DNA of 64,000 nt, taken from NCBI RefSeq assembly GCF_006345805.1, contig NC_042999.1:22878001-22942000 (forward strand). Reading direction: 5' to 3'. Of this stretch, positions 15,636 to 58,866 are shown in pieces. Position 1 is the first letter of the stretch. Each line of letters begins with the position of its first letter. The notes under the pieces were generated by a model. It did not search any database. It was not told the origin of the DNA and saw nothing but the letters and a program-made list of their open reading frames with translations. This stretch comes from Octopus sinensis. Lineage: Eukaryota. The position numbers and the translations under genes are program-made.

Positions 15636-15860
15636 TATTTCTTTACTAAAGGAGCTAAACACAGAGGAGACAAACAAGGACAGACAAACGGATTAAGTCG
15701 ATTATATCGACCCCAGTGCGTAACTGGTATTTAATTTATCGACCCCAAAAGGATGAAAGGCAAAGTCGACCACGGCGGAATTTGAACTCAGAACGTAACG
15801 GCAGACGAAATACGGCTACGAATTTCGCCCGGGGTGCTAACGTTTCTGCCAGCTCATCGT
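15636..15860 (-). mobile_element. SINE-B, type 1
   Basis: Ends AAAGAAATA|GGTATG; no TSD found. Confidence 0.85.
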
Positions 15861-16279
15861 CAGGTACCAAGCGATGAGGACTGTACCCGAATCCATGAAA
15901 TTGCGAAACGAAATCCTTAAATACCCAACCATGCCTTCAGCTTTGAAGAATGAGAAACTGTAGCAGGCTGATGTGGATCCTGATAACAGAATTCACATGA
16001 GCTATAGATATGCAGATGAAAGGCAACGAACTACAGCATATCCAGTTGTTCATTGATCAGATTCCGCTCATGTCATAATAGAACTTTCATAATCCTCTGT
16101 CCGATGCACATTGTAAACAATGCGTTATTATCAATAGATGTTTTGCCGACCTAAAACTAAACTTTATCGTATTACATAAACAAGAAGATTTGTCATTAAC
16201 GAATACCCTATTTTTTTAAAAACTGAAAAAGGAAAAAATACCCATTTGACACTTCCCCAAGATAATTTTTCTAATATAG

Positions 16280-16660
16280 ACACAAAGCCTGAAATTTATA
16301 TCTGTCTGAAGGAGCTAATCGATTACATCGAACTCTGATACTTACTTTTATCAACATAGGAAGGATGAAAGGCAAAGTCGACCTCGGTGAAACTGGAACT
16401 CAGAACGTAAATAGCCTCAAATAATTCCTATTTCTTTTTACTACCCACAAGGGGCTTAACATAGAGGGGACAAACAAGGACAGGCAAACGGATTAAGTCG
16501 ATTATATCAACTCCAGTGCGTAACTGGTACTTATTTAAACGACCTCGAAAGGATGAAAGGCAAAGTCGACCTCGGCGGAATTTGAACTCAGAACGTAGCG
16601 GCAGACGAAATACCGCTAAGCATTTCGTCCGTCGTGCTAACGATACTGCCAGGTCACCGC
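16280..16660 (-). mobile_element. SINE-B dimer (type 1 followed by decayed type 2)
   Basis: Junction at 16428/16429. Confidence 0.8.
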
Positions 16661-26687: not shown

Positions 26688-27047
26688 GGCGCAGGAGCGG
26701 CTCTGTGGTAAGTAGCTTGCTTACTAACCACATGGTTCCGGGTTCAGTCCCACTGCGTGGCACTTTGGGCAAGTGTCTTCTACTATAGCCTTGGGCCGAC
26801 AAAAGCCTTGTGAGTGGATTTGATAGACGGAAACTGAAAGAAGCCCGTTTGTATGTCTGTGTTTGTCCCCCCAAAATAGCTTGACAACCGGTGCTGGTGT
26901 GTTTACGTCCCCGTGACTTAGCGGTTCGGCAAAAGAGACCGATAGAATAAGTACTAGGCTTCCAAAGAATAATTCCTGGGGTCGATTTGCTCGACTAAAG
27001 GCGGTGCTCCAGCATGGCCGCAGTCAAAATGACTGAAACAAGTAAGA
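26688..27047 (+). mobile_element. SINE-A, full length, almost without internal microsatellite
   Basis: Halves joined as GAAGCCCGTTTGTATGTCTGTGTTTGTCCCCC. Confidence 0.9.
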
Positions 27048-32084: not shown

Positions 32085-33544
32085 TGTATGTATGTATGTA
32101 TGTATGTATGTATGTATATGAAATGTATCATATATTTGTGTTCGTGCGACTGTGTCTTTGTTTACGACTCGGGTTGGTTATTTTTTATGTCAGCCAGTAA
32201 CAGCGAGACATAGTCACAATCACAGACAAATAAATTGTTAAAGCGAAAGGGAAAGACAGAGAGAGAGAGAGAGTGGGAGTAAGGGAGAGAGAGAGGAGGA
32301 GGGAGAGAGAGAGACTGAAGAACGAGAAGTAATGGGAGAGTAAAAGATCTGAGATCAAACGAAAATTTTATAGTTTTGTTCACCTAACTTCACATTAATT
32401 AGTTAGATATATCTACGGTGTGTGTGTGCTTACATGTGCAGACGAGTGTACATTAAGTGTATATAAATAATATAGTTTGTATGTGTGTGTGTGTGAGGAG
32501 TCTGTGTGTGTGTGGTTGTCTGTGCGTGTGTATGTATGAGTGCCAGTGTGTGCGTGTGTGTGTATGTCTGTGTGTTTGTAGGTGTGGGTGTCTGTGTGTG
32601 TACGTGTGAGTGCTTGTGTGTGCGTGTGTGTGTGTGTCTATGTGTGTGTCTATGTACGTGTGAGTACCTGTGTTTGCGTGTGTGTATGTCTGTGTGTGGG
32701 TGTCTGTGTCTGTGTGTGTACGTGTGAGTGACTATGTGTACGTATGTGTGTGTATGTCTGTGTGTGTGTATGGGTGGGTGTCTGTGCGCGCACGTATGAG
32801 TGCCTGTGTGTGCATGTGTGTATGTGTGCGCGTCTGTATGTGTCTGTGTGTGTGCGTGTGTATGTGCGTATGAAAGAGAAAAATAGAGTATGTGTTCCCC
32901 GTTCGAAAAGCAATGTGTATAGAAGTGGTTAAATCATATTCAATGATATTTGTGCCAAGTACACCATGGATCGGATACAGATACAGCTCCTTCCTGAACC
33001 ATATAGACTCATAAAAGCCTGTTTTCCGGTTTCTATGGCACATAAATTCTCCACCTGGATAGAACGCAAGTCCGTCACAGGACTACTCATTTTTGCCAGC
33101 TGAGTGGACTGGAGCAACGTGAAATGAAGTGTTTTGCTCAAGAATACAACGCGTCGCCCGGTCCAGGAATCGAAACCGCAACCTTACGAGAATGAATCCA
33201 ACACCCTAACCACTAAGCCATGCATCTCCACGTTGACCGCTCCCTGAACCATAAAGTTGCTTCTGAGGCTTTGTAGTGGATTGCCTAAAGATATGAGGGA
33301 CGGGTACAGACTGTCCTTTTGAATGGGTTGCAGTAGTCTTAAATAGTGGTTTTCCTTAGACAATTCCTGTCTATCAGAAGGTGTGTGAGACTTAAAACTG
33401 GAAACAAAGGTGTGAACTTAGATAAACAACGTTTAACATTCGGCTGCTTTTATTTGGTGACAAGATGTGTGAAAATCGATGGAGTTGTACCTGGTCAAAA
33501 ATGGGAATATACCAATGATTGATAGTGACAAATTAACTCTTCTT

Positions 33545-34392
33545 TTCTACTCTAGGCACAAGGCTGAAATTTTGGGGGAGGAGACCAGTCGATTAGATCG
33601 ATTCCAGTACGTAACCGGTATTTAATTTATCGACCCCGAAACGATAAAAAATAATGTCTACCTCGGCGGTGTTTGAACTCAGAACGTAAATACAGACGAA
33701 ATACCACTAAGCATTTCGCCCGGCGTGCTAACGATTCTTATTTCTTTATTGATCACAAGGAGCTAAACACAGAGGGGACAAACAAAGACAGACAAAGGGA
33801 TTAAGTCGATTACATCGACCGCAGTGCGTAACTGGTACTTATTTTATCAACCCCGAAAGGATAAAAAGCAAAGTCTACTTCGGCGGAATTTGAACTCAGA
33901 ACGTAGCGGCAGACGAAATACCTATTTCTTTACTACCCACAAGGGGTTAAACACAGAGGGGACAAACAAGGACAAATAAACGGATTAAGTCGATTACATC
34001 GACCCCAGTGCGTAACTGGTACTTATTTAATCGACCCCGAAAGGATGAAAAGCAAAGTCAACTTCGGCGGAACTTGAACTCAGAACGTAAAGACATACGA
34101 AATACTGCTAAGCATTTCGCCCAGCGTGCTAACATTTCTGCCAGCTCGCCGCCTTATATATATATTTCTTTATTGCCCACAAGGGGCTAAACATATAGGG
34201 GACAAACAAGGACAGACAAACGGATTAAGTCGATTATATCGATCCCAGTGCGTAACTGGTACTTATTTAATCGACCCCGAAAGAATGAAAGGCAAAGTCG
34301 ACCTCGGTGGAATTTGAACTCAGAACGTAGCGGCAAACGAAATACCGTTAAGCATTTCGCCCGGCGTGCTAACGATTCTGCCAGCTCGCCGC
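33545..34392 (-). mobile_element. SINE-B tetramer (three type 1 units and a terminal type 2)
   Basis: Junctions at ~34163, 33922/33923 and 33738/33739. Confidence 0.9.
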
Positions 34393-34599
34393 TTTGAGTG
34401 ACAAATTAACTTCATCAGTTAAGTCTTTCTCAACACGACTTTCACAATGACAAATACGTCTGTGTAAAAGCAACACTTAACACCTCTACACAAACCAATA
34501 AGGTTGTTTAGATGCCCGCACGCACAAATTATTTAACAGTGTCGTGGAGATGTATTCCAACATGTCGACATGTCTGTTGACACAGTTTTATATCTCTGA

Positions 34600-39265: not shown

Positions 39266-39435
39266 GTATACACACGTTATTGATGCATGATGTAAGCTGC
39301 TGATTCTTAATTACAGTGAAGAACACGGCAAATATTTCGTAACGTATTGCTGTCGGTCATGTATAAAATATGTGAACTAAAAGCTTAAACACCCGGCCTT
39401 TCTCTCCCCTGCTCTCTCCCTTTCTCCTCTTCCTC

Positions 39436-39712
39436 TCCCTCTGCCTCTCCCTCTGCCTCAACCGCTTCCTCTCCCTCTGCCTCAGCCGCTTCCTCTCCCT
39501 CTGCCTCAGCCGCTTCCTCTCCCTCTGCCTCAGCCGCTTCCTCTCCCTCTGCCTCAGCCGCTTCCTCTCCCTCTGCCTCAGCCGCTTCCTCTCCCTCTGC
39601 CTCAGCCGCTTCCTCTCCCTCTGCCTCAGCCGCTTCCTCTCCCTCTGCCTCAGCCGCTTCCTCTCCCTCTGCCTCAGCCGCTTCCTCTCCCTCTGCCTCA
39701 GCAGCTTCCTCT
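39436..39712. repeat. 24-bp minisatellite (CTTCCTCTCCCTCTGCCTCAGCCG), ~11 copies
   Basis: Near-perfect tandem units; reads as (RQRERKRL)10 on the minus strand. Confidence 0.95.
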
Positions 39713-41627: not shown

Positions 41628-41737
41628 CTGGAAAATAAGAAATAAGAAACACGACAATAAGAAAATAAGAAATCCCCATTAGCGTTGTCTGTTTAAAAAT
41701 TGCTTTCGTCATGACTTTGGTGATATTGAAAATTCTA

Positions 41738-42135
41738 AAGCGGCGAGCTGGCAGAAACGTTAGCACGCCGGGCGAAATGCTTAGCGGCATTCCGTCTGCG
41801 TTACGTTGTGAGTTCAAATTCCGCCGAGGTTCTCTTTGCCTTTCATCCTTTCGGGGTCGATAAATTAAGTACCAGTTACGCACTGGCATCGATGTAATCA
41901 ACTTAATCCGTTTGTCTGTCCTTGTTTGTCCTCTGTGTTTAGCCCCTTGTGGGCAGTAAAGAAATAGGTATTTTGTCTGTCCTTACATTCTGAGTTCAAA
42001 TTCCGCCGATGTCGACTTTGCCTTTTATCCATTCGGTGTTGATAAATTAAGTACTAGTTGCATACTGGAGTTGATCTAATTGACTGGTCCCCTCCGCCAA
42101 AATTTCGGGCCTTGTTCTTAGAGTAGAAAAGGATA
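41738..42135 (+). mobile_element. SINE-B dimer nested in the maT element
   Basis: Junction AAAGAAATA|GGTATTTT at 41966/41967. Confidence 0.85.
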
Positions 42136-42199
42136 TTAAAAACTCTATAAGCAATTTGTAATCCCTAGTTACTTTCCACCCATCCTGATTGCATGCATG

Positions 42200-42510: not shown

Positions 42511-42567
42511 GCATGCATGTATGCATGTATGTATGTATGCATGTATGTATAACTTGTGTAAAATATA

Positions 42568-42747
42568 TATTTCGTTATTGCCCACAAGGGGTTAAACATA
42601 GAGGGGACAAACAAGGACAGACAAAGGGATTAAGTCGATTACATCGACCCCAGTGTGTAACTGGTACTTTATTTATCGACCCCGAAAGGATGAGAGGCAA
42701 AGTCAACCTCGGCGGAATTTGAACTCAGAACGTAATGACAGACGAAA
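42568..42747 (-). mobile_element. 5'-truncated SINE-B, type 1, with 18-bp TSD
   Basis: TAACTTGTG(T/C)AAAATATA at 42550-42567 and 42748-42765. Confidence 0.85.
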
Positions 42748-42959
42748 TAACTTGTGCAAAATATAATCATCTAATATTGTTACAGATGTTGGTAAATCAC
42801 TTCTCGTAAGCATAAATTGATATTAATATATGCAAATTTTCAATGTGAAATTATGGAAGAATAAATTATTTTTCGTCTTCCATCGCTTTTGGATCTGCGA
42901 ACATTTTGACGATATGACTTTTTGATGAGGTATTTTAAAAACGTATTGAAATCTCAGTC

Positions 42960-45639: not shown

Positions 45640-46230
45640 TTGCTCTTTTACTTGTGTCAGTCATTTGATTGCGGCCATACTGGAGCACTGCCTTTAGTCT
45701 AGCAAATCGACCCTAGGACTTATTCTTTGTAAGGCTGGTATTTATTCTATCGGTCTCTTTTGCCGAACCGCTAATTTACGGGGATGTACACACACCAGCA
45801 TCGGTTGTCAAGTGATGTTGAGAGGGGGGGACAACACAGACACACAAACACACACATATATATACATATATACCTATGCATATGTATGACGGGCTTCTTT
45901 CAGTTTCCGTCTACCAAATCCAATCACAAGGCTTTGGTCGGCCCGAGGCTATAGTAGAAGATACTTGCCCAATGTGACACGCAGTGGGAATGAACCCGGG
46001 ACCACGTGGCTGGTAAACAAGCTACTTACCACACAGCCACTCCTGCGCCTATATATGCATATATATGACGGGCTTCTTTCAGTTTCCGTCTACCAAATCC
46101 AATCACAAGGCTTTGGTCGGCCCGAGGCTATAGTAGAAGACACTTGCCCAAGGTGGCACGCAGTGGGAATGAACCCGGGACCACGTGGTTTGTAAGCAAG
46201 CTACTTACCATACAGCCACTCCTGCGCCTA
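45640..46230 (-). mobile_element. SINE-A with tandemly duplicated head
   Basis: Two heads (~45885-46050 and ~46065-46230) share private variants. Confidence 0.85.
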
Positions 46231-46793
46231 TTATTTAAGTTAATTTAATATTTGTTTAATTGGGAGTGTATTGGTCAAGGTGACCTACTCCGGTTCGAAA
46301 AATCAGAAATCTGGGAATGCTTTGGAGTAAAAGGTCTCAGAAAATCGATGTTGTACATCAAGTACAAGTCTTTTAGAAAAATAGTTCCTGCTATTCAGAT
46401 TGAGCTACAGTTTAGACCTGTTGTGAAAAAAAGGTGATCATTGAAGTCTGTTGTTACAGATTAATGAATGCTGTTGCCATGGATTAATAAATTCTGTTGC
46501 CACGGATTAATAAATGCTCATGACACAAATCTATGTATAGTACTTAGGTGTTTCTCTCAGAAATTGGTAATTTTTGTCAAGCCCGTTCGCTTGCTATGTG
46601 ATTGCAGTTTTTATCGTATTATTGTTTACCTCACCTGTCATGCTCTGCTATATTTGTGACATTATAGATTTTATTTTTTCTTTATTCATATCCCTTATTA
46701 TTATCCATTCTGCTTTTTTTTTTATTGTGCTGTATGCTTTTATTTCATGTTCTCCACCAAATGCTTTAACCTTTATTGATGTTGGTATGTTAC

Positions 46794-47179: not shown

Positions 47180-47880
47180 TCGAGGTGGCACAAACGTTAG
47201 CATGCCGGACAAAAATGATTAGCGGTATCTCTCCGACTTTATAAGGCGGCGAACTGGCAGAAACGTTAGCACGCAGGGCGAAATGCGTAACCGTATTTCG
47301 TCTGTCGTTATGTTCTGAGCTCAAATTCCGCCGAGGTCGACTTTGCTTTTCATCCTTTCGGGGTCGATTAAATAAGTACCAGTTACGCACTGGGGTCGAT
47401 ATAATCGACTTAATCCGTTTGTCTGTCCTTGTTTGTCCTCTCTGTGTTTAGCCCCTTGTGGGTAGTAAAGAAATAGGTATTTGAGGGCGGCGAGCTGGCA
47501 GAAACGTTAGCACGCCGGGCGAAATGCTTAGCGGTATTTCGTCTGCCGTTACGCTCTGGATCGATTAAATAAGTACCAGTTACGCACTGAGGTCGATATA
47601 ATCGACTTAATCCGTTTGTCTGTCCTTGTTTGTCCCCTCTATGTTTAGCCCCTTGTGGGCAGTAAAGAAATAAGAAACGTTAGCACGCTAGGCGAAATGC
47701 TCAGCGGTATTTTGTCTGCCGCTATGTTCTGAGTTCAAATTCCGCCGAGGTCGACTTTGCCTTTCATCCTTTCGGGGTTGATTAAATAAGTACCAGCTGA
47801 GCACTTGGGTCAATGTAATCAACTAGACCCTTTTCTTAAAGAATTTCAAGCCTTGTGCCTTTGGTAGAGATGATTATTAT
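47180..47880 (+). mobile_element. SINE-B array (old head, two type 1 units, terminal type 2)
   Basis: Junctions at 47475/47476 (GGTAT) and 47672/47673 (AGAAAC). Confidence 0.85.
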
Positions 47881-48400
47881 TAATTATTTGATGAAAACTC
47901 TCAGCTTTCTTTTGCTGGGTGTGATGGAAAGGGTCAGCTTTCCACAGCCAGCGTACTATGGTGACACTTGTTTACTGGCCATGCTTCAAGAACTCTGCGA
48001 AGAATTCATGCAGTTCCAAGCAATGCTGAGTTTTGAAGGTGTTCTGTCTTTACATTTGTACCAATCTTTTTGAACCAAGTTGGTAGCTGAGTGCTGATAC
48101 TTCCAAGTGCACCAATTACTATTGGTATCACTTCTACTAAGGCAGCGAGCTGGCAGAAACGTTAGCACGCTGGGCGAAATGCTCAGCAGAATTTCGGCTG
48201 CCGATACGTTCTGAGTTCAAATTCCGCCGATGTCGACTTTGCCTTTCATCCTTTCGGGGTTGATAAATTAAGTACCAGTTACGCACTGGGGTCGATGTAA
48301 TCGACTTAATCCGTTTGTCTGTCCTTGTTTGTCCTCTCTGTGTTTAGCCCCTTGTGGGCAATAAAGAAATAGGTATCACTTCTACTCTCCTCATTGATCA
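47875..48400 (-). pseudogene. Second R4/Dong-type 3' remnant, split by a SINE insertion
   Basis: VEVIPIVIGALGSISTQL..KLSIAWNC/LLGTA-like sequence aligning at DNA level with 62280-62460; resumes after the SINE at 48372. Confidence 0.7.
48139..48371 (+). mobile_element. SINE-B, type 1, with 15-bp TSD inside the R4/Dong remnant
   Basis: GGTATCACTTCTACT at 48124-48138 and 48372-48386. Confidence 0.9.
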
Positions 48401-49457: not shown

Positions 49458-50345
49458 AGGCGCAAGGTTGTTGTGTGGTAAGAAGTTAGCTGCCTAACCA
49501 CATGGTTCCGGTTTCAGTCCCGCTGTGTGACACTTTGCGCAGGTGTCTTCTACTACAGCCTCGGGCCGACCAAAGCTTTGTGAGTGGACGTGGTGGACAG
49601 AAGCTGAAAGAAGCCCATCATGTGTGTGTGTGTGTATGTTTGTGTATGCGTGTCTTTGAGTCTGTGTTTGTCCCTCACAACCGGTGTTGGTTTGATTACG
49701 TCCCCGTACCATAGCGGTTCCGCAAAAAGAGACCGATAAAGTAAGTACCAGTCGCGTACTAGGGTCGATCTAATCGACTGACCTCATCCCCCCCCTCCAC
49801 CCCAAATTTCAGGCCTTGTGCTTATAGTAAAAAGGATTAATAATTAGAGAAAGGATGCGAACTGGTAGAATCGTTAGTGAGTCGGACAAAATCCTTTGCG
49901 ACATTTTTTCGCGGTTTGTTCTGGCTTCGAATTCCACCGGCTTCGACTTTGTTTTTCATCTTTTCGGGATCGATAAAATAAAAACCAGTTGAGAACTGTG
50001 GTGGGAATGGGCGGGGGGGGGGCAAGTAACCGATTAGCACCCAACCAAGCAAAAAAAAAAAAAAAATCACGTCTTGTGTCTATAGTAGAGAAGATTAATA
50101 GTTAGAAAGACGGTGACGAGCTAGCAAAATCGTTTGTGTGGGTCGGACAAACTGCTTGACGGCATTTTCTTCGCGCTCTTTACGTTCTGTGTTCAAATTT
50201 CGCTGAGGTCGACTTTACCTTTCATCCTTTCAAGGATCCATAAAATAAATATCAGTTGAACACGTGGGTCAATGTTATTGACTTACCCACCCCCCTTGAA
50301 GCTGTAGGCATTGTGTCAAAATTTGAAACCATTAACAGTTAGGGA
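49458..50345 (+). mobile_element. SINE cluster: SINE-A ending in a type 2 tail, then two diverged SINE-B type 2 copies
   Basis: Head at 49458; AAATTTCAGGCCTTGTGC tail at ~49805; Deu-core copies at ~49850-50100 and ~50110-50340. Confidence 0.65.
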
Positions 50346-50522
50346 GTTTGTTTTTTTTAGTTTTAAGAAATACAATAATCCCTCGTCATATCACGGTTCA
50401 CCTATCGCGGTTTATTATTTAAGTTTACGTCGATTCTTCTGTGGTGTTGTTTTGCATTTATAATTTAATAAATATATACAACTTATAAATTTTTTTTTTT
50501 AAATATACAGTACATATACATA

Positions 50523-51800: not shown

Positions 51801-52035
51801 TATTTCTTTACTACCCACAAGGGGCTAAACACAGAGGGGGACAAACAAGGACAGTCAAACGGATTAAGTCGACTACATCGACCCCAGTGCGTAACTGGTA
51901 CTTAATTTAATCGACCCCGAAAGGATGAAAGGCAAAGTCGACCTTGGCGGAATTTGAACCCAGAACGTAACGGCAGACGAAATACGGCTACGCATTTCGC
52001 CCGGCGTGCTAACGTTTCTGCCAGCTCGCCGCCCT
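51801..52035 (-). mobile_element. SINE-B, type 1, with 16-bp TSD, just upstream of the coding exon
   Basis: TAGTGGTTCTCATATA at 51785-51800 and 52036-52051. Confidence 0.9.
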
Positions 52036-57946: not shown

Positions 57947-58866
57947 GTATACGACGGGCTTCTTTCAGTTTCCGTCTACCAAATCTACTCACAAGGCTTT
58001 AGTTTGGTCAGCCCGAGGTTATAGTAGAAGACACTTGCCCAAGGTGCCACGCAGTAGGATTGAACCCGGAACCATATATACATAGTCTAGCGGTGGTCTG
58101 CTCCTAGGTAGGTTCTGTGCATGTGAACCTTTTCTAGCACTCCCTATATGATCTGAGAGGACCCGTACTCCCTCCTGTCACTGTTAAGTAGATTACTGGG
58201 ACCTCGGTTACTATAATTAGACTTGGGTGAATACCTATTTCTTTATTACCCACAAGGGGCTAAACACAGAGGGGACAAACAAGGACAGACATAGGTATTA
58301 AGTCGATTAGATCGACCCCAGTGCGTAACTGGTACTTAATTTATCGACCCCGAAAGGATGAAAGGCAAAGTCGACCTCGGCGGAATTTGAACTCACAACG
58401 TAACGCAGACGAAATACGGCTACGCATTTCGCCCGGCGTGCTAGCGCTTCTGCCAGCTCGCCGCCTTTTCACTTGGGTGAATACCGGTTTGGGTTTCCGT
58501 TGCCTTCTCCAGGTAGATAGAATTTGAACTCAGAATGTAGAGAGCCAGAAGATATATCATCGTAAAGCATCTCTGACGACGTGGCAACGTGACATAAAGT
58601 CCCCGCCCTGGGAATCGAACCCGCGAACCTTCACTACACACACATTATAGACTTTGGCCATGCTGGGCACTGCCTCGATCAACTTTAGTCGAACGAATTG
58701 ACCCCAGTTCTTATTTCTTTTTTTAACATGGCACTTATTCTATGGGGTCTTTTGCCGAACTGCTAAGTTACGGGGACGTAAACACACGAGCCTCCAGGTA
58801 TCAAGCGGTGGTAGGTGGGACACACACACACACACCACACCCACACACCACACACACACACATATA

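What the first reader, a model, noticed from the sequence alone, without database searches (positions are those of the whole stretch)
33545..34392. Self-targeting SINE: a young subfamily builds tandem arrays by inserting into its own family's head
Seen: five arrays (12375-12740, 16280-16660, 33545-34392, 41738-42135, 47180-47880) all have type 1 units upstream and a single type 2 unit as the 3'-most member. Junctions recur at fixed head positions: AAAGAAATA|GGTATTT (12541, 33922, 41966, 47475) and AAAGAAATA|AGAA(A/T)CGTTAG (33738, 47672). Both types also occur alone, so this is not one dimeric master. The GGTATTTC junction forms a GAAATA-GG-TATTTC inverted repeat. Inference: target-primed insertion at a preferred site inside older copies, with the 5' end resolved by homology, a safe-haven strategy that converts old copies into arrays.
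Basis: partly seen in the sequence, partly recalled or inferred. Interest (0 to 1): 0.7.

Follow-up and report, generated by a model that had tools for sequence, protein, structure and literature searches.

The report
Octopus SINE copies stacked into arrays
An octopus short interspersed element (SINE) forms head-to-tail stacks, most likely because new copies are added in register to older resident copies at a few fixed points near their 5' end; this is a real variant of known retrotransposon behaviour, not a new kind of system.

Summary
The window is octopus DNA. It has five same-orientation arrays of one SINE family with a tRNA-SINE-like head. Type 1 units lie upstream, and a more diverged type 2 unit is always last. 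Junctions recur exactly: tail|GGTATTT at head position 47 (four times) and tail|AGAA(A/T)CGTTAG at position 14 (twice), with none expected by chance.

In favour:
- Target-site duplications (TSDs) of solo type 1 copies start with NNTAT, often GGTAT, the same motif as position 47.
- Terminal type 2 units are older (CpG kept 48% vs 86%).
- No junction carries its own TSD.
- At two orthologous loci compared across three Octopus species, type 1 sequence was added in register inside an older copy, and the unoccupied state survives in a sister species. At one of them the upstream unit is a chimera.

Against or beyond:
- One perfect 15-bp TSD flanks all four units of the focal array.
- Its A|B junction (tail + 7 nt + leader + full head) looks like a reverse-transcriptase template jump or read-through RNA.
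- Position 14 does not fit the TSD motif.
- Positions 56 and 131 are also used.
- One new insert carries a GGTATTTC trailer, so its donor came from an array.

"Safe haven" is untested. This is a new variant of a known kind.

The parts
34397..34411 (-). 5' copy of the target-site duplication AGTTAATTTGTCACT that flanks the whole four-unit array; the leader CAAA follows at 34393-34396
   Evidence: 15/15 match to the 3' copy, no shuffle as good
34163..34392 (-). Unit A, full-length type 1 (AGAATCG/CCACC subfamily, closest to solo 9398, 95.1%)
34153..34162 (-). A|B junction: spacer TATATAT plus leader AAG, then a full head. Not a head-internal junction
   Evidence: the same class as 47476-47486
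33923..34152 (-). Unit B, full-length type 1
33739..33922 (-). Unit C, type 1 starting at head position 47 (junction AAAGAAATA|GGTATTTCG at 33923/33922)
33539..33738 (-). Unit D, type 2 starting at head position 14 (junction AAAGAAATA|AGAATCGTTAG at 33739/33738), tail ...GAGTAGAAAAGAAG
33524..33538 (-). 3' copy of the TSD AGTTAATTTGTCACT
12376..12770 (-). Array 12375: old head fragment (about 50-82; 12737-12770) + type 1 from position about 36-40 (12542-12736, joined at an AAAT microhomology) | type 2 from position 47 (12376-12541). No TSD found
16267..16660 (-). Array 16280: type 1 (16429-16660; head 1-46 carries 7 of its 14 differences) | very degenerate type 2 from about position 47 (16267-16428). 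No TSD found
41722..42147 (+). Array 41738: TSD GATATTGAAAATTCTA (41722-41737), leader, type 1 (41740-41966) | type 2 from position 47 (41967-42131), TSD copy GATATTAAAAACTCTA (42132-42147; 14/16)
47181..47871 (+). Array 47180: old head fragment 4-65 (47181-47241), TAAG, type 1 (47246-47475), GGTATTT+GAGG (47476-47486), type 1 with an internal deletion (47487-47672) | type 2 from position 14 (47673-47871)
58236..58464 (-). Solo type 1 whose 15-bp TSD GGTATTCACCCAAGT is non-SINE target DNA starting with the head-47 motif. Other solos: 9398-9627, 15636-15855, 42563-42751 (5' end at about 50), 48142-48371, 51801-52032; type 2 solo 7295-7505

Best explanation
The units are copies of one octopus SINE family whose head resembles a tRNA-derived pol III promoter. 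All share a roughly 165-nt head and body. Type 1 and type 2 differ in the 3' part but share a related tail motif (CCTTGTG..TAGTA.AGAAA), so they may use the same LINE partner.

Arrays grow one unit at a time.
1. A type 1 RNA is reverse transcribed from a break in a resident, usually older, copy. The break is most often at 46|47 (GC|GGTATTT) or 13|14 (GC|AGAA) of the head.
2. The far end of the new cDNA is captured by the homologous resident sequence upstream.
3. The new unit therefore lands in register and in the same orientation, and makes no target-site duplication of its own. The outer duplication belongs to the resident copy.

Site 47 is favoured because its sequence (GGTATTT) is the same motif with which ordinary type 1 insertions start their duplications. 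That could reflect an endonuclease preference. It could also reflect pairing of the nicked DNA with a GGUAUUU trailer on RNAs transcribed from copies that already sit in arrays.

A minority of junctions have the form tail + 7 nt + leader + full head. These include A|B in the focal array. They are better explained by the reverse transcriptase jumping from the 5' end of one SINE RNA to the 3' end of another, or by read-through RNA.

Shown: the anatomy, the age asymmetry, the unoccupied sites and the chimeric first unit.
Inferred: target-primed reverse transcription, the cause of the site preference, and the RNA trailer.
For: 1. Junctions recur exactly and beyond chance.
2. No junction has its own TSD. 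Solos have 12-21 bp TSDs.
3. Six of 7 type 1 insertions with a verified TSD start it with NNTAT (GGTAT twice, AGTAT, TATAT twice, AATAT). One TSD-less solo, 15636, is also followed by GGTAT. Solo 58236 reads AAAGAAATA|GGTATTC with GGTATTC in target DNA.
4. In arrays 12, 16, 41 and 47 the terminal type 2 unit is much more decayed than the type 1 units upstream. CpG kept is 24/50 against 72/84 (Fisher 7e-6). Type 2 pairs are 75.9% identical against 89.2% for type 1.
5. The quality of the outer TSD follows the freshness of the type 2 unit: perfect at 33545, 14/16 at 41738, and none at 12375, 16280 or 47180.
6. Units within an array are no more alike than units from different arrays, so local duplication is excluded.
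7. Orthologous locus a. O. vulgaris L010:7543-7820 has 108 extra bp, type 1 (131-230) + GGTATTTC, inserted in register in an old copy. The old copy is unoccupied in O. sinensis L009:7282-7451 and O. bimaculoides L008:7854-8021.
8. Orthologous locus b. O. sinensis and O. vulgaris (L009:16963-17231, L010:16756-17024) carry a chimeric unit followed by old(56-end). The chimera has the old-specific head 1-45 and then type 1 123-230. O. bimaculoides has the single old unit.
9. L008 holds an old head split at 14-28 with a 14/15 overlap that shares three derived bases, as a staggered cut at 13|14 would leave.
10. The head of a16_u1 (positions 1-46) has excess differences, as expected of a chimera (P = 0.012).
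Against: - The focal array has one perfect 15-bp TSD around all four units. Its type 2 unit is as fresh as the others (CpG 0.81). Its A|B junction cannot arise by insertion into a head.
- In array 41738 the first 46 nt of the first unit are pristine although the resident type 2 is decayed. The model then requires the resident head to have been replaced exactly.
- Position 14 (AGAAA) does not fit NNTAT.
- 5' ends at about position 50 also occur next to unique DNA (solo 42563; fragment 12737-12770). That suggests an intrinsic stop or cleavage point.
- The old fragments upstream of arrays 12375 and 47180 are too diverged to be duplicates of the downstream unit.
- The two clean comparative cases use positions 56 and 131, not 14 or 47.
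- The L008 split head has an assembly gap inside the intervening block.
- The sample is about 155 kb, not a genome.
Confidence: 0.55

Rival explanations
1. One-step chimeric retrotransposition. Target-primed reverse transcription starts on the 3'-most (type 2) RNA. The reverse transcriptase stops at specific head positions (before GC at 13|14 and 46|47) or at the RNA 5' end. It then jumps to the 3' end of another SINE RNA, sometimes several times, and the whole concatemer integrates with a single TSD.
For: - A single perfect 15-bp TSD flanks four units at 33545, and a 14/16 TSD flanks the 41738 dimer. There are no internal TSDs, and the first unit is full length with a normal leader.
- The A|B and 47475 junctions read tail + 7 nt + leader + full head, as expected when an RNA 3' end is joined to the 5' end of the next RNA.
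- 5' ends at about position 50 lie next to unique DNA.
- Published precedent exists in Magnaporthe. [quoted passage not shown] The sites here are GGC*A and AGC*G, and 46|47 is the loop/stem boundary of a predicted 13-bp hairpin.
Against: - It does not explain why the first template is the old, CpG-decayed unit in 4 of 5 arrays.
- Three of 5 arrays lack TSDs although their type 1 units are as fresh as solos.
- Type 1-initiated events show no jumps (0/6) against 5/6 for type 2.
- Loci a and b show stepwise addition to a resident copy.
Confidence: 0.2
2. Multimeric or read-through source elements. Arrays, or a type 1 unit plus part of the next head, are transcribed as one RNA from the first unit's promoter and copied as a block. 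The fixed junctions are then inherited from a few founder arrays.
For: - The O. vulgaris-specific insert at L010:7672-7779 carries GGTATTTC (head 47-54) after the tail, in a place where the target has no such sequence. Its donor therefore had the tail|47 junction.
- A GGTATTT spacer lies at 47476-47482.
- Dimers are flanked by a single TSD.
- The consensus unit has no TTTT terminator. CpG decay of TTTCG to TTTTG at 41967-41975 creates one just after the junction.
Against: - The type 2 parts of the three dimers are only 64-77% identical to each other, while their type 1 parts are 86-93% identical. They are therefore not copies of one dimer.
- Array architectures differ from one another.
- Loci a and b show addition to resident copies.
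Confidence: 0.12
3. DNA-level tandem duplication or unequal crossing-over within a single inserted element, as proposed for bivalve SINE arrays.
For: The overall layout, TSD-(SINE)n-TSD with head-truncated internal units, resembles that described in Scapharca broughtonii (PMC11481361).
Against: Units within an array differ by 6-11%, as much as units at different loci. Arrays mix two unit types with different 3' parts. Every internal unit has a complete tail.
Confidence: 0.03

Closest known systems
Gene conversion or replacement of resident Alu copies by target-primed reverse transcription plus homology, and L1 chimeras formed when a nascent cDNA anneals to an upstream endogenous L1.
   Same: A new cDNA is primed in or next to a resident homologous copy and is resolved through homology. 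This leaves no new TSD and a chimeric element, as seen at locus b.
   Different: Here the outcome is an added tandem unit rather than a replacement. The 3' junction falls at recurrent positions inside the head rather than in an A-rich tail.
Chimeric retrogenes made by LINE reverse-transcriptase template switching (bipartite and tripartite chimeras; PMC2104539)
   Same: Concatenated retrocopies with no internal TSD and one flanking TSD. The 3' part is truncated at specific sites, the 5' part is full length, and double jumps occur. This fits the focal array and the tail+7 nt+leader+head junctions.
   Different: Those chimeras join unrelated RNAs in one event. Here the partners belong to one family, the 3' unit is usually older, and stepwise addition is seen at orthologous loci.
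Tandem-like SINE arrays in bivalves, TSD1-(SINE)n-TSD1 (PMC11481361)
   Same: Another mollusc with SINE arrays bounded by one TSD, in which internal units share the same head truncation.
   Different: In the bivalve arrays the units also have truncated tails and are highly similar, pointing to recombination. Here tails are complete, units are diverged, and two unit types are involved.
Correlation between the start of the TSD and the 3'-end sequence of SINE/LINE RNA in RTE-related retroposons (PMC6007223)
   Same: TSD starts are not random and mirror the 3' end of the RNA (NNTAT/GGTAT for type 1, ATTAT/ATATT/TTAAT for type 2).
   Different: The LINE partner here is unidentified. The motif also lies inside the element's own head, which makes self-insertion possible.

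Membership tests
tRNA-derived SINE (non-autonomous, LINE-dependent retroposon) | Dispersed short copies flanked by target-site duplications | tested here: met
   Six of 7 solos in the window have 15-19 bp TSDs. More are found in L006, L008 and L009.
tRNA-derived SINE (non-autonomous, LINE-dependent retroposon) | Head recognisable as a tRNA with internal A and B boxes | tested here: inconclusive
   B-box-like GAGTTCAAATTCC and A-box-like TTAGCACGCCGG are seen by eye. ARAGORN finds no tRNA and Rfam has no hit. The minimum-free-energy fold is a long hairpin, z = -1.8.
tRNA-derived SINE (non-autonomous, LINE-dependent retroposon) | 3' tail shared with a partner LINE | not testable with these tools
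   No LINE open reading frame or 3' end was found in the window. Type 1 and type 2 share a tail motif.
Template-switch chimeric retrocopy | All parts inserted in one event: one TSD around the whole, none inside | tested here: inconclusive
   Met in form at 33545 (15/15) and 41738 (14/16). No TSD at 12375, 16280 or 47180. The age asymmetry and stepwise gains at other loci argue against one event as the general rule.
Template-switch chimeric retrocopy | 3' part truncated at a switch site, 5' part a full-length RNA copy | tested here: met
   Terminal units start at position 14 or 47. Upstream units are full length with an AAG-type leader.
Bivalve-type TSD1-(SINE)n-TSD1 array | First and internal units have truncated tails and the units are highly similar | tested here: not met
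   Every unit has a complete AAAGAAATA tail. Within-array identity is 88.6-93.6%.
   Loci a and b in the KLHL10 region of three Octopus species. Not testable for the arrays of the window itself.
   Clear at locus b. Suggestive at 16429-16660 (P = 0.012). Not seen at 41740-41966.
Named octopus SINEs (OK, OR1, OR2 of Ohshima and Okada 1994) | Sequence identity to the published consensus | not testable with these tools
The lead comes from memory only.

The most novel reading that the evidence does not exclude
A homing SINE. Type 1 copies that sit in an array are transcribed past their tail into the next unit's head, giving a ...GAAAUA-GGUAUUU(C...) trailer. CpG decay of TTTCG to TTTTG even supplies a pol III terminator there. 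That head-derived trailer pairs with nicked heads of resident copies, so array-born RNAs preferentially seed new arrays, with both ends resolved by homology. This would be a self-reinforcing route from a dispersed SINE to a proto-satellite.
Probability: 0.2. Interest if true: 0.65.

Novelty: new variant of a known kind. Interest (0 to 1): 0.42.

Why it matters
If confirmed genome-wide, it would show that a SINE can expand by adding units to its own older copies at defined head positions. That would have four consequences.
- It would explain the dense SINE clusters of octopus genomes.
- It would bias repeat annotation and age estimates, because the first units are chimeras.
- It would give a concrete, testable path from interspersed repeats to tandem arrays.
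- It would offer natural markers, unit-by-unit gains, for Octopus phylogeny.

It does not reveal a new class of element or enzyme.

Tried and rejected
- **Metagenome, bacterial-genome and viral collections.** I scanned them for the SINE. Only chance matches turned up, and no octopus DNA.
- **ARAGORN and Rfam**. Neither recognises the head.
- **ORFs in the window**. Only low-complexity artefacts were found, so there is no gene through which to find orthologues of the window itself. An exact look-up of the ORF next to the focal array found nothing.
- **Protein searches.** The search with a concatenated six-frame SINE translation and the one with KLHL10 gave few octopus proteins. The useful route was cluster members of KLHL10.
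- **Classical nested insertion with TSD for each array.** Rejected. The upstream fragments at 12737-12770 and 47181-47241 are too diverged to be duplicates of the downstream unit.
- **Local tandem duplication.** Rejected by within-array divergence.
- **A single dimeric master.** Rejected by the divergence of the type 2 parts.
- **Microhomology between tail and head as the cause of the position-14 junction.** Rejected, because both AGAAA motifs are retained at the junction.
- **Locus c** (L009:23231-23815 against L008:30800-33857). Too rearranged, and interrupted by an assembly gap, to interpret.

Full report
**What the window is.** It is microsatellite-rich eukaryotic DNA of about 37% G+C, with no real open reading frames. 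Translating the repeat and searching the protein collection hit a 'hypothetical protein' of Octopus vulgaris that is itself a translated copy of the element. The genomic copy there is 96.5% identical to my consensus. The family is also present in O. bimaculoides and O. sinensis. The window therefore comes from an Octopus genome.

**The element.**
- All copies share a head and body of about 165 nt: (AAG)GCGGCGAGCTGGCAGAAACGTTAGCACGCCGGGCGAAATGCTTAGC|GGTATTTCGTCTGCC...AATCGACT.
- Type 1 continues TTAATCCGTTTGTCTGTCC...CCCCTTGTGGGCAGTAAAGAAATA.
- Type 2 continues ...CCCCAAAATTTCAGGCCTTGTGCCTATAGTAGAAAGG.
- The two tails are alignable (CCTTGTG..TAGTA.AGAAA), so a shared LINE partner is plausible.
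- ARAGORN and Rfam do not recognise the head. The tRNA origin rests on A- and B-box-like motifs seen by eye.

**Check of the observation.**
- The focal array lies on the minus strand: leader CAAA, A (34392-34163, full), TATATAT+AAG, B (34152-33923, full), C (33922-33739, from head position 47), D (33738-33539, type 2, from position 14).
- AAAGAAATAGGTATTT occurs exactly four times and AAAGAAATAAGAAWCGTTAG exactly twice. None is expected in shuffles.
- Six of the 14 type 1 tails abut a same-family head, which occupies about 3% of the window (P about 2e-6).
- Three corrections apply. The 47475 junction is of a different class: GGTATTT is followed by GAGG and a complete head. The 16428 junction is degenerate. 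Arrays 12375 and 47180 carry extra old head fragments at their 5' side.

**Target-site duplications.**
- Six of seven solos have 15-19 bp TSDs with one mismatch in about 111 nt. Further solos in L006, L008 and L009 behave the same way.
- No junction inside any array has a TSD.
- One perfect 15-bp TSD (AGTTAATTTGTCACT) flanks all four units of the focal array. A 14/16 TSD flanks the 41738 dimer. Arrays 12375, 16280 and 47180 have none.
- Six of 7 type 1 insertions with a verified TSD start it with NNTAT: GGTAT twice, AGTAT, TATAT twice and AATAT. The TSD-less solo 15636 is also followed by GGTAT.
- Solo 58236 reads AAAGAAATA|GGTATTC, and there GGTATTC is demonstrably target DNA.
- Head position 47 (GC|GGTATTT) is therefore a good copy of the normal insertion motif. 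Position 14 (GC|AGAAA) is not.

**Ages.**
- Over the same 119 positions, type 1 units are 89.2% identical to each other and type 2 units 75.9%.
- In arrays 12, 16, 41 and 47 the terminal type 2 unit keeps 24 of 50 consensus CpGs. The type 1 units upstream keep 72 of 84 (Fisher 7e-6). The losses are mostly private to each copy.
- The exception is the focal array, whose type 2 unit is as fresh as its neighbours (0.81).
- TSD quality follows the freshness of the type 2 unit, not that of the type 1 units.
- Units within an array are no more alike than units from different loci (A-B 89.1, A-C 89.7, B-C 88.6, X1-X2 93.6%). That excludes local duplication.
- The three type 1|type 2(47) dimers have type 2 parts only 64-77% identical, which excludes a common dimeric master.

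**Comparative evidence.** Members of the KLHL10 protein cluster could be looked up, which gave orthologous regions of O. bimaculoides (L008), O. sinensis (L009) and O. vulgaris (L010).
- *Locus a.* O. vulgaris alone has 108 extra bp inside an old copy. They consist of type 1 positions 131-230, the tail, and then GGTATTTC, followed by the old copy resuming at position 131. O. sinensis and O. bimaculoides keep the single old copy. The 8 nt after the tail equal head positions 47-54 and are not target sequence. The donor RNA or DNA therefore already carried the tail|47 junction.
- *Locus b.* O. sinensis and O. vulgaris have a unit whose first 45 nt carry the old copy's private substitutions and whose positions 123-230 are type 1. 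It is followed by tail|GA plus the old copy from position 56 to its end. O. bimaculoides has only the old copy.
They show stepwise addition in the same orientation and in homologous register, with a chimeric first unit.
- O. sinensis also has a lineage-specific tail|GGTATTTCG junction (L009:23700-23720). In O. bimaculoides an old head is split at 14-28 with a 14/15 overlap sharing three derived bases, and a type 2 tail abuts the downstream half. Both loci are rearranged, and the second contains an assembly gap.
- Counting all loci, 8 of 10 junctions are at position 14 or 47. The other two are at 56 and 131.

**What does not fit stepwise insertion.**
- The A|B junction of the focal array and the 47475 junction read tail + 7 nt (TATATAT, GGTATTT) + leader + complete head. 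No insertion into a head makes that. An RNA 3' end joined to the 5' end of the next RNA does.
- The focal array as a whole, with four units, one perfect TSD and a fresh type 2 unit, has the form of a multipartite chimeric retrocopy. LINE reverse transcriptases are known to switch templates at specific sites (GCC*A/U, near hairpins) and to do so twice in one event (PMC2104539). The sites here read GGC*A and AGC*G, and 46|47 is the loop/stem boundary of a predicted 13-bp hairpin.
- 5' ends at about position 50 also occur next to unique DNA (solo 42563; fragment 12737-12770).
- I therefore keep one-step template switching as a serious rival. It may be the true origin of the focal array. It does not explain the age asymmetry, the missing TSDs or loci a and b.

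**Conclusion.**
- The core of the inference is supported by direct comparative evidence: younger copies are added to older resident copies, with the 5' side resolved by homology.
- The claim of a single preferred target mechanism is only half supported. Position 47 matches the insertion motif and position 14 does not.
- Part of the constancy of the junction may be inherited from array-derived donors.
- Template jumping probably contributes.
- 'Safe haven' is untested.
- The behaviour combines known processes: homology-resolved target-primed insertion, template switching, and TSD motifs that mirror the RNA 3' end (PMC6007223). It resembles arrays already described in a bivalve (PMC11481361). 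I rate it a new variant of a known kind, of moderate interest.

Noticed in passing
window 45875-46231 (minus strand): A second, unrelated SINE family with a tRNA-SINE-like head (GGCGCAGGAGTGGCTG...) forms a head-to-tail dimer of two full-length 179-bp units that are 95% identical. They are joined through a (CATATATATG)-type tail. Tail-to-full-head stacking is therefore not limited to the family in the finding.
   Followed up: partly
window 49680-50350 (plus strand): An older array of three related units. Each has a longer tail (...TATAGTAGAAAGGATTAATAATTAGAGAAAGG) that abuts a nearly complete head. The extra ATTAAT... resembles the sequence with which young type 2 copies start their TSDs (ATTAT/ATATT/TTAAT). 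That hints that priming pairs the target with the RNA tail.
   Followed up: partly
window, about a dozen sites (e.g. 1282-1338, 3986-4043, 8792-8849, 13109-13165, 26938-26996): Weak profile matches to positions 118-165 only (GATAAATTAAGTACCAG...GTCGATGTAATCGACT). They suggest a central domain shared with other SINE families of this genome.
   Followed up: no
window 39426-39712: A 24-bp minisatellite, CCTCTGCCTCAGCCGCTTCCTCTC, in 12 copies at 97% identity.
   Followed up: no
window 58520-58590 (minus strand): An old head fragment (positions 18-83) lies about 55 bp upstream of solo 58236 in the same orientation. It is another case of a young copy landing beside an old one, though not inside it.
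   Followed up: no
L009:23597-23850: The O. sinensis array ends in an inverted head fragment with its leader (AACGTTTCTGCCAGCTCACCACC-CTTTAAG). The tail is duplicated (GAAATAGAAATA), and a foreign insertion of about 240 bp splits the first unit at position 127. The inverted piece is reminiscent of twin priming.
   Followed up: partly
all full-length copies (window, L006, L008, L009): Nearly every full-length copy is preceded by AAG, AGG or AAAG between the TSD and GCGGCG. The transcribed element therefore probably starts about 3 nt upstream of the head as usually drawn.
   Followed up: partly
L007 (Logan contig SRR11869384_2110364): A 1.5-kb contig from another octopod run carries four diverged units of the same superfamily, again partly stacked tail to head.
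   Followed up: no
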